Shown in pieces: positions 20,993 through 63,110 of a DNA stretch of 64,000 nucleotides. Made by a program: the position numbers and the translations under genes. The first letter of the stretch is position 1. The number at the start of each line of letters is the position of its first letter. The DNA is taken from contig NC_091289.1 in assembly GCF_032444005.1 (NCBI RefSeq), positions 6,138,001 through 6,202,000 of the forward strand, in the 5' to 3' direction. This stretch comes from Ranitomeya imitator (lineage: Eukaryota). The notes under the pieces were generated by a model. The model searched no databases and was not told the DNA's origin. It saw nothing but the letters and a program-made list of their open reading frames with translations.

Positions 20993-21579
20993 TGTAACGA
21001 CTTCACCTCTCAGTGCTGAGCTCTGTGCAGTGATTGACAGCTCAGTTGTCCAGTCTGGTGCACGGGTGTGCTGAGCTCTCTGTGCGATGATTGATAGATC
21101 AGTACAGTCTGGTGCAGAGGCATGCTGAGCTCTCTGTGCAATGATTGACAGCTCATATGTTCAGTCTGGTGCAGGGGCATGCTGAGCTCTCTGTGCGATG
21201 ATTGATAGATCAGTACAGTCTGGTGCAGAGGCATGCTGAGCTCTCTGTGCAATGATTGACAGCTCATATGTTCAGTCTGGTGCAGGGGCATGCTGAGCTC
21301 TCTGTGCGGTGATTGATAGATCAGTACAGTCTGGTGCAGAGGCATGCTGAGCTCTCTGTGCGATGATTGACAGCTCATATGTTCAGTCTGGTGCAGGGGT
21401 GTGCTGAGCTCTCTGTGCGATGATTGACAGCTCATATGTTCAGTCTGGTGCAGGGGCATGCTGAGCTCTCTGTGCAGTGATTGACAGCTCAGTTGTGCAG
21501 TGATTTACAGCTCAGTTGCTCAGTCTGGTCCAGGGGTATGCTGAGCTCTCTGTGCAGTGATTGACAGATCAGTAGTGCA
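20993..21579 (+). mobile_element. Family B LTR, 3'-truncated, with about 10 units of the 57-bp U3 repeat (alternating 54/57-bp units)
   Basis: Same tcacc|TGTAACGAC start as the complete LTR at 33974. Cut off by the PLE fragment. Confidence 0.85.
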
Positions 21580-22297
21580 AGAGTCTTATAGAAAATGCGA
21601 GCACTCACCATCCACTAAAATCCACTTCTTTATTGTGACATGTAGTCAAAAGGCAGGAAAAGTCAGGGAAAAAAATGTGATTCCACAAGACGACGGCCGT
21701 TTCGCGCTGCCGCGCTTCCACGGGTCTTGATGCACATTGTGGGTGGAGTCCTTTTCAGCAGTATCCGCTCCTAGTTCACCACTCCTCCAACAGCGTCATC
21801 ACCAGATCCTACTTATCAAATAAAATACCATGATATTACATGGAAAAATAAAAACATGTTTAAAAGAGACAACGTATGAAAATACAAAGAAGTCAAAATT
21901 ACATAAACTGATACAAAGTTACATCACAAAAACACCGACATATCAAGTCTCTCATTTAACCCTAAAGGACCCGTAGCATTAACCCGCATGATCCACGTGC
22001 CTTCCCTTCTTAATAATAACCTATTATGATCCCCTCCTTGTTCGGGTAAAGAGACCCTTTCCTGTCCAGCAAACCGCAATGCAGACGCTTCTCCCCCATG
22101 TTGTGTACGCATATGCGAAATTAACCGTGGGACTCCCTTCCCAGTGCTGATTGAATTATAATGTTCCCTAAATCTCACAAAGAGGGGCCTGATAGTTTTC
22201 CTGATATAATAAAAACAAAAAGGGCAAAATAATACATAAACCGTATGTGTAGTTCTACACGATATAAAGTCTCGTACTCTGTGAACATGAGGGCCTC
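21580..22297 (-). mobile_element. Penelope-like element, 5'-truncated (GIY-YIG C-terminus plus pseudo-LTR)
   Basis: RFREHYNSISTGKGVPRLISHM...GPLGLNERLDMSVFL is homologous to 37320-38087. It is followed by a hammerhead motif, AATAAA and GGTGAGTGC on the minus strand. Confidence 0.9.
21686..21729 (-). ncRNA. Minimal type I hammerhead ribozyme motif, variant core CCGUGGA
   Basis: CAAGAC-CCGUGGA-A-GCGC(GGCA)GCGC-GAA-AC(GGCC)GU-C-GUCUUG. All three stems form, stem III is palindromic, and the cleavage triplet is GUC. Confidence 0.75.
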
Positions 22298-27950: not shown

Positions 27951-27957
27951 CACCACA
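26984..27957. mobile_element. Solo LTR with 5-bp TSD CCGGC; contains (TA)n at about 27899-27948
   Basis: TGTCAC...CACCACA flanked by ccggc on both sides. The empty site ggaatggccggccgatag is near 42135. Confidence 0.88.
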
Positions 27958-32477: not shown

Positions 32478-32637
32478 GATCCCACCACATTACACTCATA
32501 TACTCTCAAAAACCACCATTTTGTATCCCTAGGACTTAGTTTTGAAATGTATTTACAGAATTTTCTTGACTATAGAGTGTGTCTATGATAAATCTTCAGC
32601 AGGAAACATCTGCATATCTTCATGTCGCTGCCTGGCA

Positions 32638-33558
32638 TCAGTGCATATGAACAGCTCTCTGCAGCGCCGCCTTTAGGTCTCTGCTCCGTAGGCTGTAGAT
32701 TAGGGGGTTCACTAAGGGGGTGATTAGTGTATATATCACAGTGACTACTCGGTTCAATGTAAGAAGATTACTCGTGTTAGGGACTAAGTAGATGAAAGTT
32801 ACCGATGCATAAAAAATAAAAACCACAGTAAGGTGAGACGTACAGGTGGAGAAAGCTTTACGTTTTCCGTCACTGGTGCGAATCATAATCACTGTCCTAA
32901 ATATTCTAACATAGGAGTAAAATGTGGCAGCAAAAGCTAGGAAGCCAAGAAAAGAGCCTACAACTATTACGACTAGGACATTGATGGAAATATCAGTACA
33001 AGAGATCTGGAACAAATTGGGCAGATCACAAATGAAATTCTGGATGAAGTTGGGACCACAGAACGTCAACCTTATTAAACATAAAGTATAGAGAATCGGG
33101 GGAAGAAAACTAGATGACCAACTCAAAGATACTATCTGAGTGCACTTACTCCAGGACATGACCTGGGAGTAATGGAGGGGATGACAGATGGTAACATAAC
33201 GGTCGTAAGACATGGAGGACAACAAGGAAGCCTCAGAGCACCCGAAATAGATGACAAAGAACACTTGTGCTATACAGTCTGGGAGGGAGATGGACCAATG
33301 TTGGGTGGTGAGGCCAAAGAGCATCCTCGGAGCAGTCACCGATGAGTAGGACATGTCTAAGAATGCCAAGTTTCCAAGAAAGAAATACATGGGTGTGTGA
33401 AGATGAGGGCAAGTAACTACTAGGAGGATGATGAGAACATTGGTGAAGACGGTCATCAGGTAGATGAGGAGAAAGACGGTGAAGAGGACATGGATGATGC
33501 TCTGATTATCGGATAGACTCAGGAGAAGAACACTGGTGATCAATGTTTGGTTCTTCAT
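32638..33558 (-). CDS. Olfactory receptor, class II (OR3), intact 306 aa
   Basis: All OR motifs are present. It carries the unusual DRYVTIC (Ala to Thr) and CSEASLL (Phe to Ser) relative to its paralogs. Confidence 0.96.
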   Translation of the reverse strand: MKNQTLITSVLLLSLSDNQSIIHVLFTVFLLIYLMTVFTNVLIILLVVTCPHLHTPMYFFLGNLAFLDMSYSSVTAPRMLFGLTTQHWSISLPDCIAQVFFVIYFGCSEASLLSSMSYDRYVTICHPLHYSQVMSWSKCTQIVSLSWSSSFLPPILYTLCLIRLTFCGPNFIQNFICDLPNLFQISCTDISINVLVVIVVGSFLGFLAFAATFYSYVRIFRTVIMIRTSDGKRKAFSTCTSHLTVVFIFYASVTFIYLVPNTSNLLTLNRVVTVIYTLITPLVNPLIYSLRSRDLKAALQRAVHMH

Positions 33559-33708
33559 CTCTATGCTGTGATTCTTACAAAATATTTTATTATCTTTGAT
33601 GACAACAAAGAAATATTAAGAGAATTTGATGGAATCTATGAACGCAATGGGTGAACATATCGGCTCAGATATAATATTGCTGATAGGAATTGCTAACGGC
33701 GTCCTTCA

Positions 33709-33782
33709 TTTTATAACTCATTGGTTCTCCCAGGAGCTGAAGCCACAGAAGCCCAAACCTCAGCTCCACACATCCATAATTA
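33709..33782 (-). promoter_or_regulatory. Candidate OR3 promoter (HD, O/E, TATA)
   Basis: TAATTA at 33777-33782, TCCCAGGAG at 33728-33736, minus-strand TATAAAA at 33715-33709. Confidence 0.4.
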
Positions 33783-33973
33783 ATGTACGGGGTCTCAGGA
33801 CGCTCATTGTGCTTGTTTACTGTGCAGGATTTTGCAGTTTAATTTTAACCAATGAAGATCCACAAGGCACATTTTTGTGGCAAACATCATTCGATATCTG
33901 GCTACTCTCTGTATCTCTCTGGTGTATTCCAGTGTTTGTTAAAAGGTTTGACCGCTTAAAACAAGTTATCACC

Positions 33974-35366
33974 TGTAACGACTTCACCTCTCAGTGCTGA
34001 GCTCTGTGCAGTGATTGACAGCTCAGTTCTTCAGTCTGGTGCAGGGGCTTGCTGAGCTCTCTGTGCGATGATTGACAGCTCATATGTTCAGTCTGGTGCA
34101 GGGGTGGGCTGAGCTTTCTGTCCAGTGATTGACAGCTCAGTTGTTTAGTCTGGTGCACGGGTGTGCTGAGCTCTCTGTGCGGTGATTGACAGCTCTGTTG
34201 TTCAGTCTGGTGCAGGGATGTTTTGAGCTCTCTGTGCAGTGATTGACAGTTTAGTTGTGCTGTCTGGTGCAGGGGCGTGCTGAGTTCTCTGTGCAGTGAT
34301 TGACAGCTCAGTTGTTCAGTCTGGTGCAGGGATATTTTGAGCTCACTGTGTAGTGATTGATAGTTCAGTTTTTCAGTCTGGTACAGGGGTGTGCTGAGCT
34401 TTCTGTGCAGTGATTGATAGATCAGTCCAGTCTGGTGCATGGGTGTGCTGAGCTTTCTGTGCAGTGATTGCTAGATCAGTCAAGTCTGGTGCAGGGGTGT
34501 GCTGAGCTCTCAGTGCAGTGATTGACAGCTCAGTAGTCCAGTCTGGTGCAGGGGCTTGCTGAGCTCTCTGTGCGGTGTTTGACAGCTCATTTGTTCAGTC
34601 TGGTGCAGGGGTGTGCTGAGGTGTCTGTGCAGTGATTGACAGATCAGTTGTTCTGTCTGGTGCAGGGGTGTGCTGAGCTCTCTGTGCAGTGATTGACAGA
34701 TCAGTTGTTCAGTCTGGTGCAGGAGTGTGCTGAGCTCTCTGTGTAGTGATTGACAGATTAGTTGTTCTGTCTGGTGCAGGAGTGTGCTGATCTCTCTGTG
34801 CAGTGATTGACAGATCAGTTGTTCTGTCTGGTGCAGGAGCGTGCTCAGCTCTCTGTGCAGTGATTGACATATCATTTGTTCAATCTGGTGCAGGAGTGTG
34901 CTGAGCTCTCTGTGCAGTGATTGACAGATCAGTTGTGCAGTCTGGTGCAGGGGTGTGCTGAGCTGTCTGTGTTTTTGCTGACAGCTCGGATGTCCAATCT
35001 GAGACTGGGAGGTGCTGAGCTCTTGTTAAGGGCTCCTGATTCCCTTCATTGCTCAGCTATTTAACTGAGCTGGCAGTCCCAGAAAGCTGTCAGTCATAGC
35101 TTCAGCCAAGTGTGGTTTGTTACACTGTGCCTTGTATCTTTCTTGTTTATGTATCACTGCCTGACCTTGGAGCTCGTTCTGACCATCCGTCTATTTAACC
35201 CCTTTGCTCTGATTCTCTATCCTCCTGGTATTTTGACCTCAGACCATTACCTGACTACAACTCTGTCTCTTCCCTCTGTTTATGATGTACCCTCCTGGCT
35301 ATTGACCTCGGACTCCTTTATTATCTTGACTATCGGCTTGTCGGTGAGAAGAGACTGAGCGTTACA
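33974..35366 (+). mobile_element. Complete family B solo LTR (1393 bp), 5-bp TSD TCACC, with about 17 units of the 57-bp repeat in U3
   Basis: TGTAACG...CGTTACA inverted termini, with tcacc at 33969-33973 and 35367-35371. TATA-like CTATTTAA near 35057 follows the repeats. The flanks rejoin into a T2-MITE-like sequence (aagttatcacc|tatgcac...gatcagtgggg). Confidence 0.9.
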
Positions 35367-44648: not shown

Positions 44649-47600
44649 TGTAATGACTTCACCTCTCAGTGCTGAGCTCTGTGCAGTGATTGACAGCTCA
44701 ATTGTTCAGTCTGATGCAGAGGCGTGCTGTGATTCACAGATCAGTTGTCAAGTCTGGTGCAGGGGTGTGCTGAGCTCTCTGTGCAGTGATCGATTGGCCA
44801 GTTCTTCAGTTTGGTGCAGGGGCATGCTGAGCTCTCTGTGCGGTGATCGACAGCTCAGTTGTTCAGTCTCGTGCAGGGTGTGCTGAGCTCTCTGTTCAGT
44901 GATTGACAGATCAGTTGTCCCGTTGATGCAGGGGTGTGCTGAGCTGTCTCTGTAGTTATTGACAGCTCAGTTGCTTAGTCTGGTGCAGGGGTGTGCTGAG
45001 CTGTCTGTGTAGTGATTGACAGCACAGTGAAACAGTCTGTTGCAGGGGCGTGCTGAGCTGACTGCAGTGATTGACAGCTCAGTTTTCCAGTCTGGTGCAG
45101 GGGCATGCTCAGCTCTCTGTTTAGTGATTGACAGCTCAGTTGTCAAGTCTGATGCAGGGGCATGCTCAGCTCTCTGTGCAGTGATTGACAGCTCACTTGT
45201 CCAGTCTGGTGCAGGAGTGTGCTGAGTTCTCTGTGCAGTGGTTCATGGCTCAGTTGTCCAGTCTGGTGCAGGGGCATGCTGAACTGTCTGTGCAGTGATT
45301 GACAGCTTAGCTTTTCTGCCTGGTGCAGGAATGTGCTAAGCTTTCTGTGCAGTGATTGACAGCTTAGTTGTCCAGTCTGGTGCAGGGGCGTGCTGAGTTC
45401 TCTGTGCAGTGATTGACAGCTTAGTTGTCAGTCTGGTGTAGGGGCGTGCTGAGCTTTCTGTGCAGTGATTGACAGCTTAGTTGTCAGTCTGGTGCAGGGG
45501 TGTGCTGAGTTCTCTGTGCAGTGATTGACAGCTTAGTTGTCAGTCTGGTGCAGGGGTGTGCTGAGCTCTCTGTGCAGCATTTGACAGCTTAGTTGTCCAG
45601 TCTGGTGCAGGGGCGTGCTGAGTTCTCTGTGCAGTGATTGACAGCTTAGTTGTCAGTCTGGTGCAGGAGTGTGCTGAGTTCTCTGTGCAGTGATTGATGG
45701 CTTAGTTGTTCAGTCTGGTGCAGGGGCATGCTGAACTGTCTGTGCAGTGATTGACAGCTTAGTTTTTCAGCCTGGTGCAGGAATGTGCTGAACTTTCTGT
45801 GCAGTGATTGACAGCTTAGTTGTCCACTCTGGTGCAGGGGTGTGCTGTGTTCTTTGTGCAGTGATTGACAGCTCAGTTGTCCAGTCTGGTCCATGGGCAT
45901 GCTGAGCTGTCTGTGTTGTGAGTGACAGCTTAGTTTTTCAGTCTGGTGCAGGAATGTGCTGAGCTTTCTGTGCAGTGATTGACAGCTTGGTTGTCCCTTT
46001 TGGTGCGGGGGCGTGCTGAGCTCTTTGTGCAGTGATCGACAGCTTAATTGTCAAATCGGGTGCAGGGGGATGCTGAGCTCTCTGTGCAGTGATTGACTGC
46101 TCAGTTGTCCAGTCTCTTGCAGGCGTGTGATGAGCTGTCTGTGCAGTGATTGACAGCTCAGTTGTTTAGTCTGATGCATGGGTGTGCTGAGCTGTCTGTG
46201 CAGTGATTGACAGCTTAATTGTCAAATCGGGTGCAGGGGCATGCTGAGCTCTCTATGCAGTGATTGACTGCTCAGTTGTCCAGTCTCTTGCAGGCGTGTG
46301 ATGAGCTGTCTGTGTAGTGACTGACAGCTCAATTGCTTAGTCTGGTGCAGGGGTGTGCTTAGCTGTCTGTTCAGTGATTGACAGCTCAATTGTTTAGTCT
46401 GGTGCAGGGGTGTGCTTAGCTGTCTGTGCAGTGATTGACAGCTCAGTTGTTCAGTCTGGTGCAGGGGTGTGCTGAGCTGTCTGTGGAGTGATTGACAGCT
46501 CAGTTGTTCAGTCTGGTGCAGGGGTGTGCTTAGCTGTCTGTTCAGTGATTGACAGCTCAGTTGTTTAGTCTGGTGCAGGGGTGTGCTTAGCTGTCTGTGC
46601 AGTGATTGACAGCTCAGTTGTTCAGTCTGGTGCAGGGGTGTGCTGAGCTGTCTGTTCAGTGATTGATAGCTCAGTTGTTCAGTCTGGTGCAGGGGTCTGC
46701 TGAGCTCTCTGCGCAGTGATTGACAGCTTAGTTGTCCAGTCTGGGGCAGGGGCGTGCTCAGCTCTCTGTGCAGTGATTGACAGCTCAGTTGTTCATTCTG
46801 GTGCAAGGGTCTGCTGAGCTCTTTGTGCAGTGATTGACAGCTCAGTTGTCCAGTCTGGTTCAGGGGCATGCTCAGCTCTCTGTTCAGTGATTGACAGCTC
46901 AGTTGCCCAATCTGGTGCAGGGGCATGCTCAGCTCTCTGTTCAGTGATTGACAGCTCAGTTGTCCAGTCTGGTGCAGGGGCATGATGAGCTGTCTGTGCA
47001 GTGATTGACAGCTTAGTTGTCAGTCTGGTGCAGGGGTGTGCTGAGTTCTCTGTGCAGTGATTGACAGCTTAGTTGTCAGTCTGGTGCAGGGGTGTGCTGA
47101 GCTCTCTGTGCAGCATTTGACAGCTTAGTTGTCCAGTCTGGTGCAGGGGCGTGCTGAGTTCTCTGTGCAGTGATTGACAGCTTAGTTGTCAGTCTGGTGC
47201 AGGAGTGTGCTGAGTTCTCTGTGCAGTGATTGATGGCTTAGTTGTTCAGTCTGGTGCAGGGGCATGCTGAACTGTCTGTGCAGTGATTGACAGCTTAGTT
47301 TTTCAGCCTGGTGCAGGAATGTGCTGAACTTTCTGTGCAGTGATTGACAGCTTAGTTGTCCACTCTGGTGCAGGGGTGTGCTGTGTTCTTTGTGCAGTGA
47401 TTGACAGCTCAGTTGTCCAGTCTGGTCCATGGGCATGCTGAGCTGTCTGTGTTGTGAGTGACAGCTTAGTTTTTCAGTCTGGTGCAGGAATGTGCTGAGC
47501 TTTCTGTGCAGTGATTGACAGCTTGGTTGTCCCTTTTGGTGCGGGGGCGTGCTGAGCTCTTTGTGCAGTGATCGACAGCTTAATTGTCAAATCGGGTGCA

Positions 47601-50600
47601 GGGGGATGCTGAGCTCTCTGTGCAGTGATTGACTGCTCAGTTGTCCAGTCTCTTGCAGGCGTGTGATGAGCTGTCTGTGCAGTGATTGACAGCTCAGTTG
47701 TTTAGTCTGATGCATGGGTGTGCTGAGCTGTCTGTGCAGTGATTGACAGCTTAATTGTCAAATCGGGTGCAGGGGCATGCTGAGCTCTCTATGCAGTGAT
47801 TGACTGCTCAGTTGTCCAGTCTCTTGCAGGCGTGTGATGAGCTGTCTGTGTAGTGACTGACAGCTCAATTGCTTAGTCTGGTGCAGGGGTGTGCTTAGCT
47901 GTCTGTTCAGTGATTGACAGCTCAATTGTTTAGTCTGGTGCAGGGGTGTGCTTAGCTGTCTGTGCAGTGATTGACAGCTCAGTTGTTCAGTCTGGTGCAG
48001 GGGTGTGCTGAGCTGTCTGTGGAGTGATTGACAGCTCAGTTGTTCAGTCTGGTGCAGGGGTGTGCTTAGCTGTCTGTTCAGTGATTGACAGCTCAGTTGT
48101 TTAGTCTGGTGCAGGGGTGTGCTTAGCTGTCTGTGCAGTGATTGACAGCTCAGTTGTTCAGTCTGGTGCAGGGGTGTGCTGAGCTGTCTGTTCAGTGATT
48201 GATAGCTCAGTTGTTCAGTCTGGTGCAGGGGTCTGCTGAGCTCTCTGCGCAGTGATTGACAGCTTAGTTGTCCAGTCTGGGGCAGGGGCGTGCTCAGCTC
48301 TCTGTGCAGTGATTGACAGCTCAGTTGTTCATTCTGGTGCAAGGGTCTGCTGAGCTCTTTGTGCAGTGATTGACAGCTCAGTTGTCCAGTCTGGTTCAGG
48401 GGCATGCTCAGCTCTCTGTTCAGTGATTGACAGCTCAGTTGCCCAGTCTGGTGCAGGGGCATGCTCAGCTCTCTGTTCAGTGATTGACAGCTCAGTTGTC
48501 CAGTCTGGTGCAGGGGCATGATGAGCTGTCTGTGCAGTGATTGACAGCTTAGTTGTCCAGTCTGGTGAAGGGGTGTGCTGAGGTGTCTGTGCAGTGATTG
48601 ACAGCTCAGTTGTTCAGTCTGGTGCAGGGGTGTGCTTAGCTCTCTGTTCAGTGAATGACAGCTCAGTTGTTTAGTCTGGTGCAGGGGTGTGCTTAGCTGT
48701 CTGTGCAGTGATTGACAGCTCAGTTGTTCAGTCTGGTGCAGGGGTGTGCTGAGCTGTCTGTTCAGTGATTGATAGCTCAGTTGTCAAGTCTGGTGCAGGG
48801 GTCTGCTGAGCTCTCTGTGCAGTGATTGAAAGCTTAGTTGTCCAGTCTGGGGCAGGGGCATGCTCAGCTCTCTGTGCAGTGATTGACAGCTCAGTTGTTC
48901 ATTCTGGTTCAGGGATGTGCTGAGCTGTCTGTCTCTTCGGTGATTGATAGCTCAGTTGTCAAGTCTGGTGCAAGGGTCTGCTGAGCGCTTTGTGCAGTGA
49001 TTGACAGCTCAGTTGTCCAGTTTGGTTCAGGGGCATGCTCAGCTTTCTGTTCAGTGTTTGACAGCTCAGTTGCCCAGTCTGGTGCAGGGGCATGCTCAGC
49101 TCTCTGTTCAGTGATTGACAGCTCAGTTGTCCAGTCTGGTGCAGGGGCATGATGAGCTGTCTGTGCAGTGATTGACAGCTTAGTTCTCCAGTCTGGTGCA
49201 GGGGTGTGCTGAGCTCTCTGTGCAGTGATTGACAGCTCAGTTGTTCAGTCTGGTGCAAAGGTGTGCTGAGCTGTCTGTGCAGTGATTGTCAGCTCAGTTC
49301 CTCAGTCTGGTACAGGGGTGTGCTGAGCTGTCTGTGCAGTGATTGACAGCTCAGTTGTCCAGTCTGGTGCAGGGGTGTGCCGAGTTGTCTGTGCAGTGAT
49401 TGATAGCTCAATTGTCAAGTCTGGTGCAGGGATGTGCTGAGCTCTCTGTGCAGCATTTGACAGCTTAGTTGTCCAGTCTGGTGCAGGGGCGTGCTGAGTT
49501 CTCTGTGCAGTGATTGACAGCTTAGTTGTCAGTCTGGTGCAGGGGTGTGCTGAGCTCTCTGTGCAGCATTTGACATCTCAGTTGCCCAGTCTGGTGCAGG
49601 GGCATGCTCAGCTCTCTGTTCAGTGATTGACAGCTCCGTTGTCCAGTCTGGTGCAGGAGTGTGCTGAGTTCTCTGTGCAGTGATTAATGGCTTAGATGTC
49701 CAGTCTGGTGCAGGGGCATGCTGAACTGTCTGTGCAGTGATTGACAGCTTAGTTTTTCAGCCTGGTGCAGGAATGTGCTGAACTTTCTGTGCAGTGATTG
49801 ACAGCTTAGTTGTCCACTCTGGTGCAGGGGCGTGCTGTGTTCTTTGTGCAGTGATTGACAGCTCAGTTGTCCAGTCTGGTCCACGGGCATGCTGAGCTGT
49901 CTGTGTTGTGATTGACAGCTTAGTTTTTCAGTCTGACGCAGGAATGTGCTGAGCTTTCTGTGCAGTGATTGACAGCTTAATTGTCAAATCGGGTGCAGGG
50001 GGATGCTGAGCTCTCTGTGCAGTGATTGACAGATCAGTTGTTCATTCTGGTGCAGGGGTGTGCTGAGCTGTCTGTTTAGTGATTGACAGCTCAGTTGCTA
50101 ATTCTGGTGCAGGGGTATGCTGAGCTGTCTGTGCAGTGATTGAAAGCTCAGTTGTCCAGTCTGGTGCAGGGGCGTGCTGAGCTCTCTCTGCAGTGATTGA
50201 CTGCTCAGTTGTCCAGTCTCTTGCAGGCATGTGATGAGCTGTCTGTGCAGTGATTGACAGCTCAGTTGTTTAGTCTGATGCATGGATGTGCTGAGCTGTC
50301 TGTGCAGTGATTGACAGCTTAATTGTCAAATCGGGTGCAGGGGCATGCTGAGCTCTCTGTGCAGTGATTGAATGCTCAGTTGTCCAGTCTCTTGCAGGCG
50401 TGTGATGAGCTGTCTGTGCAGTGACTGACAGCTCAATTGCTTAGTCTGGTGCAGGGGTGTGCTTAGCTGTCTGTTCAGTGATTGACAGCTCAATTGTTTA
50501 GTCTGGTGCAGGGGTGTGCTTAGCTGTCTGTGCAGTGATTGACAGCTCAGTTGTTCAGTCTGGTGCAGGGGTGTGCTGAGCTGTCTGTGCAGTGATTGAC

Positions 50601-53600
50601 AGCTCAGTTGTTCAGTCTGGTGCAGGGGTGTGCTGAGCTGTCTGTTCAGTGATTGATAGCTCAGTTGTCAAGTCTGGTGCAGGGGTCTGCTGAGCTCTCT
50701 GTGCAGTGATTGAAAGCTTAGTTGTCCAGTCTGGGGCAGGGGCATGCTCAGCTCTCTGTGCAGTGATTGACAGCTCAGTTGTTCATTCTGGTTCAGGGAT
50801 GTGCTGAGCTGTCTGTCTCTTCGGTGATTGATAGCTCAGTTGTCAAGTCTGGTGCAAGGGTCTGCTGAGCGCTTTGTGCAGTGATTGACAGCTCAGTTGT
50901 CCAGTCTGGTTCAGGGGCATGCTCAGCTTTCTGTTCAGTGTTTGACAGCTCAGTTGCCAAGTCTGGTGCAGGGGCATGCTCAGCTCTCTGTTCAGTGATT
51001 GACAGCTCAGTTGTCCAGTCTGGTGCAGGGGCATGATGAGCTGTCTGTGCAGTGATTGACAGCTTAGTTCTCCAGTCTGGTGCAGGGGTGTGCTGAGCTC
51101 TCTGTGCAGTGATTGACAGCTCAGTTGTTCAGTCTGGTGCAAAGGTGTGCTGAGCTGTCTGTGCAGTGATTGTCAGCTCAGTTCCTCAGTCTGGTACAGG
51201 GGTGTGCTGAGCTGTCTGTGCAGTGATTGACAGCTCAGTTGTCCAGTCTGGTGCAGGGGTGTGCCGAGTTGTCTGTGCAGTGATTGATAGCTCAATTGTC
51301 AAGTCTGGTGCAGGGATGTGCTGAGCTCTCTGTGCAGCATTTGACAGCTTAGTTGTCCAGTCTGGTGCAGGGGCGTGCTGAGTTCTCTGTGCAGTGATTG
51401 ACAGCTTAGTTGTCAGTCTGGTGCAGGGGTGTGCTGAGCTCTCTGTGCAGCATTTGACATCTCAGTTGCCCAGTCTGGTGCAGGGGCATGCTCAGCTCTC
51501 TGTTCAGTGATTGACAGCTCAGTTGTCCAGTCTGGTGCAGGGGCATGCTCAGCTCTCTGTTCAGTGATTGACAGCTCAGTTGTTCAGTCTGGTGCAGGGG
51601 TGTGCTGAGCTGTCTGTTCAGTGATTGATAGCTCAGTTATCAATTCTGGTGCAGGGGTCTGCTGAGCTCTCTGTGCAGTGATTGAAAGCTTAGTTGTCCA
51701 GTCTGGGGCAGGGGCATGCTCAGCTCTCTGTGCAGTGATTGACAGCTCAGTTGTTCATTCTGGTTCAGGGATGTGCTGAGCTGTCTGTCTCTTCGGTGAT
51801 TGATAGCTCAGTTGTCAAGTCTGGTGCAAGGGTCTGCTGAGCGCTTTGTGCAGTGATTGACAGCTCAGTTGTCCAGTCTGGTTCAGGGGCATGCTCAGCT
51901 TTCTGTTCAGTGTTTGACAGCTCAGTTGCCCAGTCTGGTGCAGGGGCATGCTCAGCTCTCTGTTCAGTGATTGACAGCTCAGTTGTCCAGTCTGGTGCAG
52001 GGGCATGATGAGCTGTCTGTGCAGTGATTGACAGCTTAGTTCTCCAGTCTGGTGCAGGCGTGTGCTGAGCTCTCTGTGCAGTGATTGACAGCTCAGTTGT
52101 TCAGTCTGGTGCAAAGGTGTGCTGAGCTGTCTGTGCAGTGATTGTCAGCTCAGTTCCTCAGTCTGGTACAGGGGTGTGCTGAGCTGTCTGTGCAGTGATT
52201 GACAGCTCAGTTGTCCAGTCTGGTGCAGGGGTGTGCCGAGTTGTCTGTGCAGTGATTGATAGCTCAATTGTCAAGTCTGGTGCAGGGATGTGCTGAGCTC
52301 TCTGTGCAGCATTTGACAGCTTAGTTGTCCAGTCTGGTGCAGGGGCGTGCTGAGTTCTCTGTGCAGTGATTGACAGCTTAGTTGTCAGTCTGGTGCAGGG
52401 GTGTGCTGAGCTCTCTGTGCAGCATTTGACATCTCAGTTGCCCAGTCTGGTGCAGGGGCATGCTCAGCTCTCTGTTCAGTGATTGACAGCTCAGTTGTCC
52501 AGTCTGGTGCAGGAGTGTGCTGAGTTCTCTGTGCAGTGATTAATGGCTTAGATGTCCAGTCTGGTGCAGGGGCATGCTGAACTGTCTGTGCAGTGATTGA
52601 CAGCTTAGTTTTTCAGCCTGGTGCAGGAATGTGCTGAACTTTCTGTGCAGTGATTGACAGCTTAGTTGTCCACTCTGGTGCAGGGGTGTGCTGTGTTCTT
52701 TGTGCAGTGATTGACAGCTCAGTTGTCCAGTCTGGTCCACGGGCATGCTGAGCTGTCTGTGTTGTGATTGACAGCTTAGTTTTTCAGTCTGACGCAGGAA
52801 TGTGCTGAGCTTTCTGTGCAGTGATTGACAGCTTAATTGTCAAATCGGGTGCAGGGGGATGCTGAGCTCTCTGTGCAGTGATTGACAGATCAGTTGTTCA
52901 TTCTGGTGCAGGGGTGTGCTGAGCTGTCTGTTCAGTGATTGACAGCTCAGTTGCTAATTCTGGTGCAGGGGTATGCTGAGCTGTCTGTGCAGTGATTGAA
53001 AGCTCAGTTGTCCAGTCTGGTGCAGGGGCGTGCTGCGCTCTCTCTGCAGTGATTGACTGCTCAGTTGTCCAGTCTCTTGCAGGCATGTGATGAGCTGTCT
53101 GTGCAGTGATTGACAGCTCAGTTGTTTAGTCTGATGCATGGGTGTGCTGAGCTGTCTGTGCAGTGATTGACAGCTTAATTGTCAAATCGGGTGCAGGGGC
53201 ATGCTGAGCTCTCTGTGCAGTGATTGACTGCTCAGTTGTCCAGTCTCTTGCAGGCGTGTGATGAGCTGTCTGTGCAGTGACTGACAGCTCAATTGCTTAG
53301 TCTGGTGCAGGGGTGTGCTTAGCTGTCTGTTCAGTGATTGACAGCTCAATTGTTTAGTCTGGTGCAGGGGTGTGCTTAGCTGTATGTGCAGTGATTGACA
53401 GCTCAGTTGTTCAGTCTGGTGCAGGGGTGTGCTGAGCTGTCTGTGGAGTGATTGACAGCTCAGTTGTTCAGTCTGGTGCAGGGGTGTGCTTAGCTGTCTG
53501 TTCAGTGATTGACAGCTCAGTTGTTTAGTCTGGTGCAGGGGTGTGCTTAGCTGTCTGTGCAGTGATTGACAGCTCAGTTGTTCAGTCTGGTGCAGGGGTG

Positions 53601-55207
53601 TGCTGAGCTGTCTGTTCAGTGATTGATAGCTCAGTTGTCAAGTCTGGTGCAGGGGTCTGCTGAGCTCTTTGTGCAGTGATTGACAGCTTAGTTGTCCAGT
53701 CTGGGGCAGGGGTGTGCTCAGCTCTCTGTGTAGTGATTGACAGCTCAGTTGTTCATTCTGGTGCAGGGGTGTGCTGAGCTGTCTGTTCAGTGATTGACAG
53801 CTCAGTTATCAAGTCTGGTGCAAGGGTCTGCTGAGCTCTTTGTGCAGTGATTGACAGCTCAGTTGTCCAGTCTGGTTCAGGGGCATGCTCAGCTCTCTGT
53901 TCAGTGATTGACAGCTCAGTTGCCCAGTCTGGTGCAGGGGCATGCTCAGCTCTCTGTTCAGTGATTGACAGCTCAGTTGCCCAGTCTGGTGCAGGGGCAT
54001 GATGAGCTGTCTGTGCATTGATTGACCGCTTAGTTGTCCAGTCTGGTGCAGGGGCATGCTGAGCTCTCTGTGCAGTGATTGACAGCTTAGTTGTCCAGTC
54101 TGGTGCAGGGGTGTGCTGAGGTGTCTGTGCAGTGATTGACAGCTCAGTTGTTCAGTCTGGTGCAGGGGTGTGCTTAGCTCTCTGTTCAGTGATTGACAGC
54201 TCAGTTGTTTAGTCTGGTGCAGGGGTGTGCTTAGCTGTCTGTGCAGTGATTGACAGCTCAGTTGTTCAGTCTGGTGCAGGGGTGTGCTGAGCTGTCTGTT
54301 CAGTGATTGATAGCTCAGTTGTCAAGTCTGGTGCAGGGGTCTGCTGAGCTCTCTGTGCAGTGATTGAAAGCTTAGTTGTCCAGTCTGGGGCAGGGGCGTG
54401 CTTAGCTCTCTGTGCAGTGATTGACAGCTCAGTTGTTCATTCTGGTGCAGGGATGTGCTGAGCTGTCTGTTCAGTGATTGATAGCTCAGTTGTCAAGTCT
54501 GGTGCAAGAGTCTGCTGAGCGCTTTGTGCAGTGATTGACAGCTCAGTTGTCCAGTCTGGTTCAGGGGCATGCTCAGCTCTCTGTTCAGTGATTGACAGCT
54601 CAGTTGCCCAGTCTGGTGCAGGGGCATGCTCAGCTCTCTGTTCAGTGATTGACAGCTCAGTTGTCCAGTCTGGTGCAGGGGCATGATGAGCTGTCTGTGC
54701 AGTGATTGACAGCTTAGTTCTCCAGTCTGGTGCAGGGGTGTGCTGAGCTCTCTGTGCAGTGATTGACAGCTTAGTTGTCCAGTCTGGTGCACGGGTGTGC
54801 TGAGGTGTCTGTGCAGTGATTGACAGCTCAGTTGTTCAGTCTGGTGCAAAGGTGTGCTGAGCTGTCTGTGCAGTGATTGTCAGCTCAGTTCCTCAGTCTG
54901 GTGCAGGGGTGTGCTGAGCTGTCTGTGCAGTGATTGACAGCTCAGTTGTCAGTCTGGTGCAGGGGTGTGCTGAGCTCTCTGTGCAGCATTTGACATCTCA
55001 GTTGCCCAGTCTGGTGCAGGGGCATGCTCAGCTCTCTGTTCAGTGATTGACAGCTCAGTTGTCCAGTCTGGTGCGGGACTGTGCTGAGTTCTCTGTGCAG
55101 TGATTGATGGCTTAGTTGTAGAGTCTGGTGCAGGGGCATGCTGAACTGTCTGTGCAGTGACTGACAGCTTAGTTTTTCAGCCTGGTGCAGGAATGTGCTG
55201 AACTTTC
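44649..55207 (+). repeat. Family B LTR start expanded into a 10.5-kb satellite of 57-bp units (about 185 units by length)
   Basis: Starts tcacc|TGTAATGAC. Consensus unit tgctgagctctctgtgcagtgattgacagctcagttgtccagtctggtgcaggggtg. Higher-order duplications are visible as identical ORF fragments at offsets 1536, 972, 1884 and 2856 bp. Confidence 0.97.
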
Positions 55208-56082
55208 TTAGGTGGAGCTCCTGCATAAAGCTTCTTTATAGTCAGTTCTGGGGTGAGCCTTTATGCACAGGAGACACAATTAACTATCAAATGCTGGGGT
55301 TCACTTAGTTATGTAAATGTTCAGTAGTTTGCGCATTGTGACTGTAACACAAATTCTAAATTGAGACCTTTTAACTCAGAGCAAAACCGACAAACTCCAA
55401 AACTCCAGGATGAACTCCAAGCACAAACTTTCCTGTGCCCTCCCCAGCCATGACCTGCATGTTTATCAGGTTCCTGTCAGCAGCGGCAAACTGCCACCGC
55501 TGAGGATTGTGACTCACCCACACTGCGGGAGAGCCCGGGGTCAGATGCAGCGGGGAAAGCTCAGGCAGACGGGACCATAGCAGCGTGGTAAAAGGAGACA
55601 CTGAGGATAGAAAACAGTAGGACCTGCGATCATGTGACCACAGGGGGCGGGGCTTAGGGTCCTGCTGCTGGAGATGAGGGTAGGATGCTGCAGGGACCAT
55701 GGAGTAGAGGAGAGGGGAACTCAGGTCATACAAACGGGGGTCATACACAGAGAGGGCGGCACGGGAAAGGAGGGGCGATCAGAGAATAGTCAGAACGTAG
55801 GCAAGGAGTCATACACGGAGATAGCAGCGCAGTACAGGAGGGACAGGTGGAAGTCTTAATGGGGACAGAACCAGATCAGAACCAGACAAACATAAAGTAG
55901 CACAGACACAAAGCACTGGCACAGGTGCAACAGGGTCACACACACTCGCCCAATGATCAGAGTATAAACGACAAGGAATGAGCCCACAATAAGGCTATAA
56001 GAAGCCTCCCAGAATCCCATAGTGAGGCCGTCAAGATTAACCTCTGAACTACCTAATCCCACAAACTAAGCAGATCATGACA

Positions 56083-59058: not shown

Positions 59059-62000
59059 TGTAACGATTTCACCTCTCAGTGCTGAGCTGTCTGTGCAGTG
59101 ATTGACAGCTCAATTGTTCAGTTTGATGCAGAGGCGTGCTGTGATTGTCATATCAGTTGTCAAGTCTGGTGCAGGGGTGTGCTGAGCTCTCTGTGCAGTG
59201 ATCGATTGGCCAGTTCTTCAGTTTGTTGCAGGGGCATGCTGAGCTCTCTGTGCAGTGATTCATAGCTCAGTTGTTCAGTCTTGTGCAGGGTGTGCTGAGC
59301 TCTCTGTTCAGTGATTGATAGCTCAGTTGTCAAGTCTGGTGCAGGTGTTTGCTGAGATCTCTGTGCAGTGATTGACAGCTCATTTGTCCAGACTGGTGCA
59401 GGGGTGTGCTCAGCTCTCTGTTGAGTGATTGACAGCTCAGTTGTCCAGTCTGGTGCAGGAGTGTGCTGAGTTCTTTGTGCAGTGATTAAGAGATCAGTTG
59501 TCCAGTCTGTTGCACGGGAATGCTGAGCTGTCTGTGCAGTGATTGACAGCTTAGTTGTCCCGTTTGGTGCAGGGGCTTGCTGAGCTCTCTGTGCAGTGAT
59601 TGACAGCTTGTCAAGTCTGGTGCAGGGGCATGCTGAGCTCTCTGTGCAGTGATTGACAGCTCAGTTGGCCTGTCTGTGCAGTGATTGATAGCTCAGTTGT
59701 CAAGTGTGGATAAGGGGTGTGCTGAGCTCTCTGTTCAGTGATTGACAGCTCAGTTGTCCAGTCTGGTGCAGGGTCATGCTCAGCTCTCTGTTCAGTGATT
59801 GACAGCTCAGTTGTCCAGTCTGGTGCAGGAGTGTGCTGAGTTTTCTGTGCAGTGATTGATGGCTCAGTTGTGCAGTCTGGTGCAGGCGCATGCTGAACTG
59901 TCTGTGCAGTGATTGACAGCTTAGTTTTTCAAGTCTGGTGCAGGAATGTGCTGAGCTTTCTGTTCAGTGATTGACAGCTTAGTTGTCCCATTTGGTGCAG
60001 GGGTGTGCTGAGCTCTCTGTGCAATAATTGACAGCTCAGTTGTCCAATCTAGTGCAGGAGTGTGCTGAGCTGTCTGTGAAGTGATTGACAGCTTAGTTGT
60101 CCCATTTGGTGCAGGGGTGTGCTGAGCTCTCTGTGCAGTGATTGACAGCTCAGTTGTCCAATCTAGTGCAGGAGTGTGCTGAGCTTTCTGTGCAGTGATT
60201 GACAGCTTAGTTGTCCCATTTGGTGCAGGGGTGTGCTGAGCTCTCTGTGCAGTGATTGACAGCTCAGTTGTCCAATCTAGTGCAGGAGTGTGCTGAGCTG
60301 TCTGTGCAGTGATTGACAGCTCAGAGGTTCAGTCTGAAGCAAGGGTGTGCTGAGCTGTCTGTGCAGTGATTGATAGCTCAGTTGTCAAGTCTGGTGCATT
60401 GGTGTGCTGAGCTCTCTGTGCAGTGATTGACAGCTCAGTTGTCCAGTTTGGTGCAGGGGCATGCTCTGCTCTTTGTTCAGTGATTCACAGCTCAGTTGTC
60501 CAGTCTGGTGCAGGGGCACGCTCAGCTCTCTGTTCAATGATTGACAGATCAGTTGTCCTGTTGATGCAGGGGTGTGCTGATCTGTCTGTGTAGTGATTGA
60601 CAGCTCAGTTGCTTAGTCTGGTGCAGGGGTGTGCCGAGCTGTCTGTGCAGTGATTGACAGCACAGTGGAACAGTCTGTTGCAGGGGCGTGCTGAGCTCTC
60701 TGTGCAGTGATTGACAGCTCACTTGTCCAGTCTGGTGCAGGAGTGTGCTGAGTTCTCTGTGCAGTGATTGATGGCTCAGTTGTCCAGTCTGGTGCAGGGG
60801 CATACTGAACTGTCTGTGCAGTGATTGACAGCTTAGTTTTTCAGCTTGGTGCAGGAATCTGCTGAGCTTTCTGTGCAGTGATTGACAGCTTAGTTGTCCA
60901 GTCTGGTGCAGGGGCGTGCTGAGCTCTCTGTGCAGCATTTGACAGCTCAGTTGTCCAGTCTGGTCCATGGGCATGCTGAGCTGTCTGTGTTGTGATTGAC
61001 AGCTTAGTTTTTCAGTCTGGTGCAGTAATGTGCTGAGCTTTCTGTGCAGTGATTGATAGATTGGTTGTCCTTTTTGGTGCGGGGGCGTGCTGAGCTCTTT
61101 GTGCAGTGATTGACAGCGTAATTGTCAAATCGGGTGCAGGGGCATGCTGAGCTCTCTGTGCAGTGATTGACTGCTCAGTTGTCCAGTCTCTTGCAGGGGT
61201 GTGATGAGCTGTCTGTGCAGTGATTGACAGTTCTATTGTTTAGTCTGATGCATGGGTGTACTGAGCTGTCTGTGCAGTGATTGACAGCTCAGTTGCTTAG
61301 TCTGGTGCAGGGGTGTGCTGAGCTGTCTGTCGAGTGATTGACAGCTCAGTTGTTCAGTCTGGTGCAGGGGTGTGCTTAGCTGTCTGTGCAGTAATTGACA
61401 GCTCAGTTGTTTAGTCTGGTGCAGGGGTGTGCTGAGTTGTCTGTTCAGTGATTGATAGCTCAGTTGTCAAGTCTGGTGCAGGGGTGTGCTTAGCTGTCTG
61501 TGCAGTGATTGACAGCTCAGTTGTTCAGTCTGGTGCAGGGGTGTGCTGAGCTGTCTGTTCAGTGACTGAGAGCTCAGTTTTCAAGTCTGGTGCAGGGGTC
61601 TGCTGAGCTCTCTGTGCAGTGATTTACAGCTCAGTTGTCCAGTCTGGTGCAGGGGCATGCTCAGCTCTCTGTTCAGTGATTGACAGCTCAGTTGTCCAGT
61701 CTGGTGCAGGGGTGTGCTGAGGTGTCTGGAGCGCCCCCAGACACAGGGCCACAGGTTACTCGGTACCAGTCCTCTCTGTCTCAGTTCTGGGGTTGTCACG
61801 GTGACGGGACCCAGTCCGTGTCCCTGCTAAGGGGCATCCAATGAAAGGGTTGATGGTATTTTGTCAAGGGTTCATGACGCCACCTGTGGTATTTGGCCGG
61901 GGAGACCGACGCTGCTTGGGGTCCACTGGGGTGATGTGATGGCAGCTAGATGGAATATCTTCCCACAGGTGAAGTATGTCCCCAGGGCTTCCCGATAATG

Positions 62001-63110
62001 TAGATGGCGATGGTGTGAGGTGCAGTCAATAACGAGGACACAGGGTTGCAGTCTCTTTACCTCTTTACTGAAGGCTTCAGGATCCTCAATCCAGAGCACT
62101 GCAAACAGGGCTGTCTGAGACCGGCCGGTCCGAAGGCACATCCAGAGTTCACTTTGCAGGTGGAAATCAGTGCCTACCACTAGCGTCTGTGTGTTGTAGT
62201 GCTTCCCTGCTGAGCATTCGGGGTAGTCCTCACAACTTCTTCTGTTCTCGTTCTTTCTAGTTCTTTCTCGTTCTTTCTATTCTTCGTCCCCCAGGTTTGT
62301 TATGGCTAGGACGCACCCGTTTGACGGGTAGGCTCGGAGCTATTCTGGGACCCTAGAGACGCCCCTCTCCACGGTTGCCCCCTATGTCTGCTTAGGTGAT
62401 GTAAGGTAAACAGCCAACCTATAATTAACTGTCCTGCTGTATTTGAAGTAAGGCATAGAGTCAGTTACTTCCTCGGTGTTCTGGTCACCGGCTAAACGCC
62501 TCAGTAGGATGTTGCCGTTCTTGGGCACGACTCCTACTGGCTCTCCTTTGTGCTTTGATCTCGTTTCTCACTGTCCACAATATCCTTCGCTTCTTGTCCT
62601 TTCTTTAGATGCCGCCGCAAGGTAGTGCAATGCGCGGCTCTGTAACGATCTGTCCTTGTCGCTAGGTGCCTGCCAGGTTCCCACACCTGACAGGGACCCC
62701 CCTGAATCTTCCCCGCAACACCCCCTGCCACGGGATGTTGCCTGGACAAAACCCAGTCAGCTTCTCTCTAACTTCCTATCCAACCCCTAGTTTTACCAGT
62801 GTGAGGAGTGGCCTAATAAATAATACCTTTTGCTCCCCCTAGTGGCCGGAGTGTGAAGTGTAATGTGTGCTGGTGATACCTGGTCAGATGAACTCCTTTA
62901 GTGCCATCAGACGTACCATCACTCCCCTTAGCGCCAGAGCGACATTACTGCAACGATCAGGTCTCTGGGGCGCTGCCTGTCTGTGCAGTGATTGACAGCT
63001 CAGTTGTTCAGTCTGGTGCAGAGGTGTGCTGAGCTGTCTGTGCAGTGATTGTCAGCTCAGTTGCTCAGTCTGGTGCAGGGGTGTGCTGAGCTGTCCGTGC
63101 AGTGATTGAC
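59059..63110 (+). repeat. Family B LTR start with a 57-bp array (about 2.8 kb net, about 49 units), interrupted by a solo LTR
   Basis: Starts tcacc|TGTAACGAT. Same unit as the other arrays. The LTR 3' part is missing. Confidence 0.95.
61727..62977 (-). mobile_element. Solo LTR, family A, with 4-bp TSD TGTC, inserted in the satellite
   Basis: TGGAGCGCCCC...GGGGCGCTGCC (terminal CA reads CC), with tgtc at 61723-61726 and 62978-62981. Confidence 0.9.

What the first reader, a model, noticed from the sequence alone, without database searches (positions are those of the whole stretch)
33974..35366. Every recent OR paralog is headed by an LTR whose U3 is a tandem array of Pbx-Meis/Prep decamers, with array length varying about 18-fold
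Seen: a solo LTR (TGTAACG...CGTTACA, TSD TCACC) sits 415 bp upstream of the OR3 ATG, back to back with the gene. The identical junction precedes OR2, OR4 and OR5, so it was inserted before the duplications. Its U3 holds a 57-bp repeat in which most units carry TGATTGACAG, some the variant TGATTGAT, and most an adjacent CAGTTG. The arrays are about 0.6, 1.0, 10.5 and 2.8 kb (about 10, 17, 185 and 49 units). Known: TGATTGACAG is the Pbx-Prep/Meis decamer, TGATTGAT a Pbx-Hox-type site, and CAGTTG an E-box/Myb site. OR choice depends on competing enhancers and heterochromatin. Inference: a TE-derived, copy-number-tunable cis element (homotypic enhancer, TF sink or heterochromatin seed) that could bias which paralog is chosen. 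TGATTGACAG-like words are also common in frog repeats, so function is unproven.
Basis: partly seen in the sequence, partly recalled or inferred. Interest (0 to 1): 0.8.

Follow-up and report, generated by a model that had tools for sequence, protein, structure and literature searches.

The report
Hitchhiking solo LTR with expanding minisatellite
One old retrotransposon LTR, whose enhancer region is a 57-base repeat, landed upstream of a frog smell-receptor gene and was copied along with the gene. Its repeat then stretched to different lengths, and nothing shows that it controls the genes.

Summary
The sequence facts mostly hold. A TSD-flanked solo LTR (33974-35366, TCACC) lies 415 bp upstream of the OR3 ATG. 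The same gene-side junction precedes OR2, OR4 and OR5. The 57-bp arrays have 10, 18, 185 and 47+3 units, and 65% of units carry the exact Pbx:Prep decamer.

Three corrections:
- Only the OR3 copy is a whole LTR. The OR2 and OR4 copies stop inside the array, where the next duplication unit begins, so two segmental-duplication breakpoints lie in the array. The OR5 copy is interrupted and runs off the window.
- The LTR belongs to an abundant dispersed family. Contigs from three organisms pile up exactly between the two LTR ends, and other copies also join 57-bp units to the LTR body.
- The 18-fold length range comes mainly from a few very recent block duplications (99-100% identical) inside the OR4 array.

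The decamer block is among the best-kept parts of the unit, but it is not statistically distinct from the rest. The arrays lack the Lhx2/Ebf sites that known OR enhancers use. A candidate proximal promoter (TAATTA, TATAAA) survives between the LTR and each ATG.

Verdict: an ordinary hitchhiking solo LTR with an unstable U3 minisatellite, a known kind of event. A role in OR choice is untested and unlikely. Another note of this scan (s1-312660) covers the OR4 array.

The parts
33974..35366 (+). Complete solo LTR (1393 bp), TGTAACG...CGTTACA, the only whole copy in the window
   Evidence: Read directly. The right end is unique in the window. Summed contig depth jumps at both ends in three organisms: flank 64-86 to 560-790 at the left end, and about 1000 to 6-42 at the right end.
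33969..33973 (.). Left target-site duplication TCACC. The right copy is at 35367-35371.
33994..34971 (+). 57-bp array of the OR3 copy, 17 full units plus one partial (putative U3 enhancer repeats). 12 of the 17 scorable units have the exact decamer TGATTGACAG.
   Evidence: TRF 17.3 copies, 86% matches; unit parsing; motif counts
34972..35366 (+). LTR body: degenerate last unit with TGACAG (34979), CCAAT (34994), TATA-like TATTTAA (about 35066), then the high-copy putative R-U5 part with an internal ~55-bp duplication
   Evidence: Highest summed contig depth (3,000-21,500 in the DNA runs X1, X3 and X9, against flanks of about 6-90).
20993..21580 (+). Truncated LTR copy upstream of OR2: LTR bases 1-20 plus 10 units, ending inside a unit
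   Evidence: It is followed by unrelated sequence.
44649..55208 (+). Truncated LTR copy upstream of OR4: LTR 5' end plus 185 units (10.5 kb) with nested block duplications. It ends inside a unit at the OR4|OR5 duplication junction.
59059..63110 (+). LTR copy upstream of OR5: 5' end plus 47 units (to 61728), a 1.25-kb repeat insertion (61729-62976), then 3 more units. It is cut at 63110 by other sequence, and the end is not resolved in the window.
32638..33558 (-). OR3, intact 306-aa olfactory receptor. OR2 is 19600-20577, OR4 43316-44236 and OR5 57726-58646, all on the minus strand.
   Evidence: Pfam 7tm_4 E 1e-48 to 1e-50. Pairwise nt identity 96-98%, dN/dS 0.33-0.55.
33559..33973 (-). Proximal upstream region kept between the LTR and the ATG in all four paralogs. 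It has TAATTA about 224 bp and TATAAA about 157 bp upstream of the ATG (candidate OR promoter).
   Evidence: motif matches only; the TSS is not shown
55208..55209 (.). Junction of the OR4/OR5 tandem duplication: an array unit abuts the homolog of 40863, with 1 bp of microhomology
   Evidence: 40862-41846 matches 55209-56193 at 96% and 41843-44678 matches 56253-59088 at 98%; sequences read
21581..22294 (.). 714-bp fragment of an unclassified dispersed repeat. It lies between the end of the OR2 array and the start of the OR3 duplication unit (22295, the homolog of 6670).
   Evidence: It is 64% identical, inverted, to 37716-38080. No Rfam hit.

Best explanation
A single LTR of an abundant frog LTR-retroelement family inserted, in divergent orientation, 415 bp upstream of the ATG of the ancestor of OR2-OR5. 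It was then reduced to a solo LTR. Its 5' (U3-like) part already carried tandem 57-bp enhancer-type repeats, each built around the Pbx:Prep/Meis decamer. That decamer is most simply the retroelement's own transcription-factor site.

Later tandem segmental duplications of the OR gene carried the LTR along. At least two of them have one breakpoint inside the array, so the OR2 and OR4 copies are truncated LTRs. The arrays then drifted in length by unequal exchange or replication slippage. The 10.5-kb OR4 array owes much of its length to a few block duplications that are younger than the OR4/OR5 gene duplication.

The element is a passenger and a source of structural instability. It is not a demonstrated regulator of OR choice.

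Shown: the insertion, the shared junction, the truncations, the family abundance and the block duplications.

Inferred: the U3 assignment, the decamer as the element's own enhancer site, the array as a breakage-prone site, and neutrality for the host.
For: - Element definition: TG...CA ends, 7-bp TIR and 5-bp TSD.
- Contig depth in three organisms rises exactly at 33974 and falls exactly after 35366. Dozens of distinct contigs carry family variants.
- Contigs from other copies join a 57-bp unit directly to the LTR body near 34979-34994. Several carry TTGATTGACAG-type words in that last unit (tables 5 and 5c). The repeat and the decamer are therefore family features.
- The identical gene-side junction occurs four times. 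Flanks are 95-96% identical, and 98% for OR4/OR5.
- The LTR body is found only once.
- The OR4 array abuts the homolog of 40863.
- The OR2 array is followed by a 714-bp repeat fragment and then the homolog of 6670, which starts the colinear OR3 unit.
- Block duplications in the OR4 array: lag 1536 (100% identical), lags 972, 1884 and 2856 (99-99.6%), lags 5424 and 6960 (96-97%).
- The OR4 and OR5 arrays share their first 3 units in register. OR5 units 25-37 track OR4 units 3-25 in rising order apart from one outlier.
- A CCAAT then TATA-like order follows the array on the + strand. This fits a U3 promoter pointing away from the OR.
- Literature: TGATTGACAG is the Prep:Pbx DECA site (PMC6023610). 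LTR12/ERV9 U3 has 5-17 tandem ~41-bp repeats full of TF sites (PMC11853044). Satellites often arise from retrotransposon tandem repeats (PMC7004042).
Against: - No full-length element with paired LTRs, PBS/PPT and gag-pol could be retrieved, so 'LTR' rests on termini, TSD, size and family abundance.
- No AATAAA signal was found in the LTR body.
- The decamer, with its 5' CAG, is nominally the best-conserved block of the unit (rank 2-3 of 48-57 windows). It is under-represented among differences between recent blocks (4 of 64 against 11 expected, p=0.013). That test is confounded by block edges and by subfamily-polymorphic positions, and only about 20 interior differences exist.
- Contig depth is not a copy number.
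- The 100%-identical 1.5-kb blocks could in part be assembly error.
Confidence: 0.75

Rival explanations
1. One reading: the arrays are homotypic clusters of TALE (Pbx-Prep/Meis) sites lying about 255 bp upstream of the candidate OR TATA box. They act in cis as an enhancer, a local factor sink or a heterochromatin seed, so array length biases which near-identical paralog an olfactory neuron chooses.
For: - 169 exact decamers, all in one orientation, lie next to four intact and moderately constrained OR genes.
- The decamer block is among the best-kept parts of the unit.
- The arrays sit close to the retained proximal promoter motifs.
- Multimerised homeodomain sites placed upstream of an OR transgene raise its expression (D'Hulst 2016, as cited in PMC12547500).
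- An LTR12/ERV9 solo LTR with 14 U3 repeats acts as an enhancer at the beta-globin locus (PMC11853044).
Against: - Conservation of the decamer is not distinguishable from other blocks (p=0.12), and 35% of units are broken.
- There are no O/E sites and hardly any TAAT sites in the arrays.
- Pbx and Meis are absent from a 2025 review of OR-choice determinants.
- The same repeat is dispersed genome-wide in three organisms, which weakens any locus-specific sink.
- The length variation stems from a few very recent duplications in one array.
- No RNA or chromatin data were available.
Confidence: 0.08
2. The array matters structurally, not transcriptionally. It is a breakage- and recombination-prone tract that repeatedly served as a breakpoint and so helped this OR subfamily expand by tandem duplication.
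For: - Both duplication junctions that can be resolved in the window have one end inside the array (21580 and 55208).
- If the array was about 0.6-1 kb of a 13-15 kb unit at the time, two such hits by chance have a probability of roughly 0.002-0.005 (my estimate).
- The 55208/55209 junction shows only 1 bp of microhomology, which points to an end-joining or template-switch event.
- The arrays themselves are highly unstable.
Against: - There are only two junctions, and one carries a 714-bp filler fragment of unclear history.
- Later deletions could have moved the apparent breakpoints.
- Array size at the time of duplication is unknown.
- Three consecutive units folded as single-stranded DNA are no more stable than shuffles (z=0.43), so no hairpin-type fragility is evident.
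Confidence: 0.3
3. The extreme length of the OR4 array (10.5 kb) is partly an assembly artefact, so the 18-fold range is overstated.
For: The array contains a perfectly identical 1.5-kb duplicate block and 99-99.6% identical duplicate or triplicate blocks. Assemblers can create or collapse such structures. No read-level check was possible because only contigs were served.
Against: The blocks have different lags, and the near-identical ones carry a few private differences. This looks like real nested duplication. The array is flanked on both sides by well-matching unique sequence.
Confidence: 0.1

Closest known systems
Human ERV9/LTR12 solo LTRs (for example the one at the 5' edge of the beta-globin LCR)
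   Same: A solo LTR whose U3 is a variable-number tandem array (5-17 units of about 41 bp) packed with recurrent transcription-factor sites, lying upstream of a tandemly duplicated gene cluster. U5 also has variable repeats (PMC11853044). Here the array is 57-bp units with a recurrent TF motif, and the LTR body also contains a ~55-bp internal duplication.
   Different: The motifs differ: Pbx:Prep decamer here, NF-Y/GATA/MZF1 there. One copy here has 185 units, far beyond the LTR12 range. Enhancer activity is demonstrated for ERV9 and not here. The copies here spread by segmental duplication of one insertion, not by separate insertions.
Satellite or minisatellite DNA born from tandem repeats inside LTR retrotransposons (for example Ogre-derived satellites in Lathyrus)
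   Same: Short tandem repeats native to an LTR element expand in place into multi-kb arrays with higher-order structure (PMC7004042; the block structure here is).
   Different: Here the expansion is seen at one locus in a vertebrate, next to genes. Chromosome-scale amplification or spread of the array on its own was not shown.
OR-choice cis elements: promoter O/E plus homeodomain sites, Greek Island enhancers and multimerised HD sites
   Same: Position immediately upstream of OR promoters and a homotypic multimer of a homeodomain-class site. Multimerised HD sites raise OR transgene expression (PMC12547500; PMC5608512 listed).
   Different: Known elements use Lhx2 (TAAT-type) and Ebf (O/E) sites. 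The arrays have no O/E sites and only rare TAAT variants. TALE factors are not part of the described mechanism.
DECA motif sites bound by maternal Prep/Pbx with NF-Y at zebrafish blastula stage
   Same: Exact 10-bp match TGATTGACAG. In the LTR's last, degenerate unit a TGACAG half-site lies about 10 bp from a CCAAT box.
   Different: Those are single conserved sites near developmental genes. Here they are repeated units of a mobile element, and CCAAT is absent from the unit consensus (9 occurrences over both strands in the arrays).

Membership tests
Solo LTR of an LTR retrotransposon / ERV | 5'-TG...CA-3' termini with a short terminal inverted repeat | tested here: met
   TGTAACG...CGTTACA at 33974 and 35366
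Solo LTR of an LTR retrotransposon / ERV | 4-6 bp target-site duplication directly flanking the element | tested here: met
   TCACC at 33969-33973 and 35367-35371
Solo LTR of an LTR retrotransposon / ERV | Member of a dispersed multi-copy family with the same boundaries | tested here: met
   Summed contig depth is 10- to several-hundred-fold above the flanks, stepping at both ends, in three organisms. Dozens of variant contigs were seen. Depth is not an exact copy number.
Solo LTR of an LTR retrotransposon / ERV | Full-length relatives with two direct LTRs, PBS/PPT and a gag-pol interior | not testable with these tools
   No eukaryotic genome search was available. There is no second copy of 34972-35366 in the window and nothing in the scan's notes.
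Solo LTR of an LTR retrotransposon / ERV | U3-R-U5 layout with promoter and polyadenylation signals | tested here: inconclusive
   Repeats, then CCAAT (34994), then TATTTAA (about 35066) on the + strand. No AATAAA or ATTAAA lies downstream.
Pbx:Prep/Meis DECA binding site | Sequence TGATTGACAG | tested here: met
   169 exact matches in the arrays and it is the unit consensus. Motif identity from PMC6023610.
Pbx:Prep/Meis DECA binding site | Occupancy by TALE factors in vivo, or selective constraint on the site | tested here: inconclusive
   Occupancy is not testable. Constraint: the decamer is intact in 65% of units and ranks 2 of 48 windows, but differs little from other blocks (p=0.12). The recent-difference test is confounded.
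Olfactory-receptor enhancer / promoter element (Lhx2 + Ebf grammar) | O/E (TCCCNNGGGA-type) and TAAT homeodomain sites, composite in Greek Islands | tested here: not met
   0 O/E matches even when relaxed. TAAT occurs only as a rare variant (21 in about 14.7 kb, both strands).
Satellite DNA | Long (>10 kb) head-to-tail array with higher-order repeat structure | tested here: met
   The OR4 array only: 10.5 kb, 185 units, nested blocks
Satellite DNA | Amplification at many loci or chromosome scale, independent of the parent element | not tested
   The array bins have lower depth than the LTR body. No genome-wide census was possible.

The most novel reading that the evidence does not exclude
The 57-bp arrays are not inert. 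Either as dense clusters of TALE (Pbx-Prep/Meis) sites or as tandem-repeat heterochromatin seeds about 255 bp from the candidate OR TATA box, they change the probability that a given near-identical paralog is chosen. Rapid array-length mutation would then give heritable, individual-to-individual variation in OR representation. This would be a TE-derived, copy-number-tunable layer of OR choice.
Probability: 0.07. Interest if true: 0.75.

Novelty: new member of a known kind. Interest (0 to 1): 0.3.

Why it matters
As it stands, this is a clean worked example of three well-known processes acting at one locus. A solo LTR hitchhikes through gene duplication. A U3 enhancer minisatellite grows toward a satellite. 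A tandem repeat sits at segmental-duplication breakpoints in an OR cluster.

It would matter more in either of two cases. The first is that the arrays prove to influence OR choice. The second is that the family's decamer-based U3 shows the retroelement exploits maternal TALE/NF-Y factors in the early embryo. Both can be tested with standard chromatin and expression assays, and neither is indicated by the sequence evidence gathered here.

Tried and rejected
- Looked for a second copy of the LTR body or right end in the window with blastn word size 7 and a 3-mismatch pattern search. None was found.
- Tested whether the decamer is more conserved than the rest of the unit: per-position frequencies, distinct-haplotype weighting, exact-10-mer survival, rare variants and Mann-Whitney. 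There is only a weak, non-significant trend.
- Tested differences between recent blocks. Depletion in the decamer is nominal (p=0.013). I reject it as evidence because mismatches pile up at block edges and at subfamily-polymorphic positions, and only about 20 interior differences exist. With up to 185 redundant sites, selection per site would be negligible anyway, so this class of test cannot decide function.
- Folded three units as single-stranded DNA to look for hairpin-based fragility: z=0.43, nothing.
- Ran Rfam on the 714-bp filler and on its relative at 37500-38600. There were no hits, so I do not call it Penelope-like.
- Searched for RNA runs holding the LTR. None was listed. Run X15 (only guessed to be RNA) covers the OR coding region and the LTR body but not the array or the upstream region. 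This is too weak to use.
- Searched the scan's notes by place, words and sequence.
- The apparent 'skips' from array units to about 34980 cannot be read as shorter arrays elsewhere. Short contigs align to whichever unit is most similar. I use them only as evidence that other copies join a unit to the LTR body.
- The low CpG o/e of the arrays (0.09-0.19 against 0.335) is uninformative because the unit consensus has no CpG.

Full report
**What is there**

The window holds five intact olfactory-receptor genes on the minus strand:
- OR1, 2264-3196
- OR2, 19600-20577
- OR3, 32638-33558
- OR4, 43316-44236
- OR5, 57726-58646

All match Pfam 7tm_4 at E 1e-48 to 1e-53. OR2-OR5 are 96-98% identical in nucleotides, with dN/dS 0.33-0.55. 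OR1 is only about 70% identical to them.

Upstream of OR3, an element spans 33974-35366. It has TGTAACG...CGTTACA ends and a 5-bp TSD (TCACC), and it starts 415 bp from the ATG. Twenty bases inside its left end begins a 57-bp tandem array, 33994-34971. TRF gives 17.3 copies at 86% matches.

**Shared junction and arrays**

The junction word GTTATCACC|TGTAAYGA occurs exactly four times, at 20984, 33965, 44640 and 59050. None is expected by chance. The four flanks align base for base across the junction (A1). This was therefore one insertion, made before OR2-OR5 diverged.

A wrap-around alignment to the unit consensus parses the arrays into 10, 18, 185 and 47+3 units. TGATTGACAG occurs 169 times in the arrays, always on the + strand, and once in the remaining 49 kb. 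TGATTGAT occurs 29 times and CAGTTG 141 times.

**Correction 1: only one whole LTR**

The LTR body and right end (34972-35366) have no other copy in the window, even at word size 7 or with 3 mismatches.
- The OR4 array stops inside a unit at 55208. It abuts sequence homologous to 40863 onward (96-98% identity). That point is the start of the OR4/OR5 duplication unit. Only 1 bp of microhomology lies at the joint.
- The OR2 array stops inside a unit at 21580. It is followed by a 714-bp fragment of an unclassified repeat, and then from 22295 by the homolog of 6670. That starts a colinear series of matches between the OR2 and OR3 units: 6670 to 22295, 13046 to 25387, 18557 to 31493, 19662 to 32643.
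- The OR5 array is split by a 1.25-kb dispersed-repeat insertion (61729-62976). It is interrupted again at 63110, and its true end lies outside the window or is lost.

So two resolvable tandem-duplication junctions have one breakpoint inside the array. If the array was 0.6-1 kb of a 13-15 kb unit, that is unlikely by chance (roughly 0.002-0.005, my estimate). It suggests the array is breakage-prone. This rests on two junctions only. Three units folded as single-stranded DNA show no unusual structure (z=0.43).

**Correction 2: the LTR is one of many**

I laid contigs of four public runs on 32400-35750. In three DNA runs from three coded organisms, the summed depth was:

| Region | Summed depth |
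|---|---|
| OR gene and flanks | about 6-90 |
| First LTR bin (starts 33968) | 280-790 |
| LTR body | 3,000-21,500 |
| Past 35423 | 6-42 |

Dozens of distinct contigs carry family variants. The steps coincide with the TSD-defined ends. This independently supports the element boundaries and shows an abundant dispersed family shared by related species.

Contigs from other copies join a 57-bp unit directly to the LTR body near 34979-34994. Some of them read TTGATTGACAG-type words in that last unit (tables 5 and 5c). So the repeat and the decamer are native to the family. These apparent skips cannot be used to infer array lengths elsewhere. A full-length element could not be sought with the tools available, so the superfamily is unknown.

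**Orientation**

After the array, the + strand reads in this order: a degenerate unit with TGACAG (34979), CCAAT (34994), and a TATA-like TATTTAA (about 35066). This fits the order U3 enhancer repeats, promoter, R-U5, pointing away from the OR gene. No AATAAA was found, so the assignment is plausible but not proven.

**Correction 3: how the lengths came to differ**

Inside the OR4 array, blocks recur at several lags:
- lag 1536: 100% identical over about 1.5 kb
- lags 972, 1884 and 2856: 99-99.6% identical
- lags 5424 and 6960: 96-97% identical

These identities are at or above the 98% of the OR4/OR5 flanks. At least about 4.5 kb (about 80 units) was therefore added after the last gene duplication.

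The OR4 and OR5 arrays still share their first three units in register. OR5 units 25-37 track OR4 units 3-25 in rising order apart from one outlier. The ancestral array thus already had tens of units.

The 18-fold range reflects a few recent events in one array and not a graded series. The perfectly identical blocks also leave some room for assembly error.

**Is the decamer protected?**

Across 247 clean units, the decamer positions match the consensus at 94.7% on average. The comparable figures are 95.5% for CAGTGATTGA, 94.7% for TCTGGTGCAG and 94.4% for TCTGTGCAGT. The lower mean of the rest (89.6%) is driven by about eight positions that are polymorphic between unit subfamilies.

The exact decamer survives in 65% of units. 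This ranks 2 of 48 windows, against 61-62% for the TCTGGTGCAG block. Mann-Whitney against the rest gives p=0.12. A count of differences between recent blocks gave 4 in the decamer against 11 expected (p=0.013). Those differences sit mostly at block edges and subfamily positions, and only about 20 interior differences exist. I do not rely on that test.

A mild excess of conservation is what one expects if the site mattered to the retroelement before insertion. With up to 185 redundant sites, host selection per site would be invisible.

**Comparison with known OR control**

TGATTGACAG is indeed the Prep:Pbx DECA site. In zebrafish blastulae it is occupied together with NF-Y (PMC6023610). Known OR promoters and enhancers use O/E and TAAT-type homeodomain sites, and multimerised HD sites raise OR transgene expression (PMC12547500).

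The arrays contain no O/E match and only rare TAAT variants. That review mentions neither Pbx/Meis nor LTRs.

All four paralogs keep TAATTA and TATAAA in the 412-416 bp between the LTR and the ATG, and OR2 and OR3 also keep CCAAT. The insertion therefore spared a plausible proximal promoter and lies about 255 bp upstream of its TATA box. No RNA run holding the LTR was listed.

**Closest known cases**

ERV9/LTR12 solo LTRs have a U3 of 5-17 tandem ~41-bp repeats rich in TF sites, and one of them acts as an enhancer at the beta-globin cluster (PMC11853044). Satellites commonly arise from tandem repeats inside LTR retrotransposons (PMC7004042). The present case is a new member of these known kinds.

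**Verdict**

The TE origin and the instability are supported. The regulatory inference is unsupported, though sequence alone cannot exclude it.

Best explanation (confidence 0.75): a hitchhiking solo LTR with an unstable U3 minisatellite that also marks duplication breakpoints. Interest is 0.3.

Another note of this scan (s1-312660) covers the OR4 array as a nascent satellite. My block analysis agrees with it.

Noticed in passing
window 35705-40450: Young, internally degraded Ty3/gypsy chromovirus. It has 384-388-bp LTRs that are 97-98% identical (35705-36088 and 40063-40450) and an integrase / SH3 / chromodomain ORF at 38883-40070. It is inserted between the OR3 LTR flank and the OR4 unit. 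Its LTR start is extremely abundant in the public runs (summed depth 13,000 to 730,000 in the three DNA runs).
   Followed up: partly
window 61729-62976: 1.25-kb dispersed repeat with imperfect terminal inverted repeats (GGAGCGCCCCCAGAC... / ...GTCTCTGGGGCGCTGC), inserted inside the OR5 array. Related pieces lie at 5235-6234 and 10562-11630.
   Followed up: partly
window 6715-7105, 22340-22643 and 22858-23637: A 15-bp minisatellite (AGGAGCCGTCACAGG; 26, 20 and about 50 copies) lies near the start of both the OR2 and OR3 duplication units. It creates spurious ORFs of 278 and 327 aa on the two strands (22862-23698 and 22724-23707).
   Followed up: no
window 21581-22294: A 714-bp fragment sits exactly between the truncated OR2 array and the start of the next duplication unit. 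It is 64% identical, inverted, to 37716-38080 inside the gypsy element. It may be filler DNA captured at the duplication junction or a later insertion. No Rfam hit.
   Followed up: partly
window 1432-1865: A 43-bp tandem repeat, 10 copies at 91% matches, downstream of OR1. It is unrelated to the 57-bp unit.
   Followed up: no
window 32703-33529 (run X15): A small run (145 million letters, kind only guessed as RNA) yields contigs over the OR coding region at depth 5-13 but none over 33632-34191. If it is RNA, some paralog of this subfamily is expressed, and the transcript does not extend into the LTR.
   Followed up: no
window 35205-35320: The LTR body contains an internal ~55-bp imperfect direct duplication (CCTCCTGG...TGACCTC[A/G]GAC...CTGACTA). 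This is the most abundant segment of the family in all runs, and family contigs show variable joints there.
   Followed up: no
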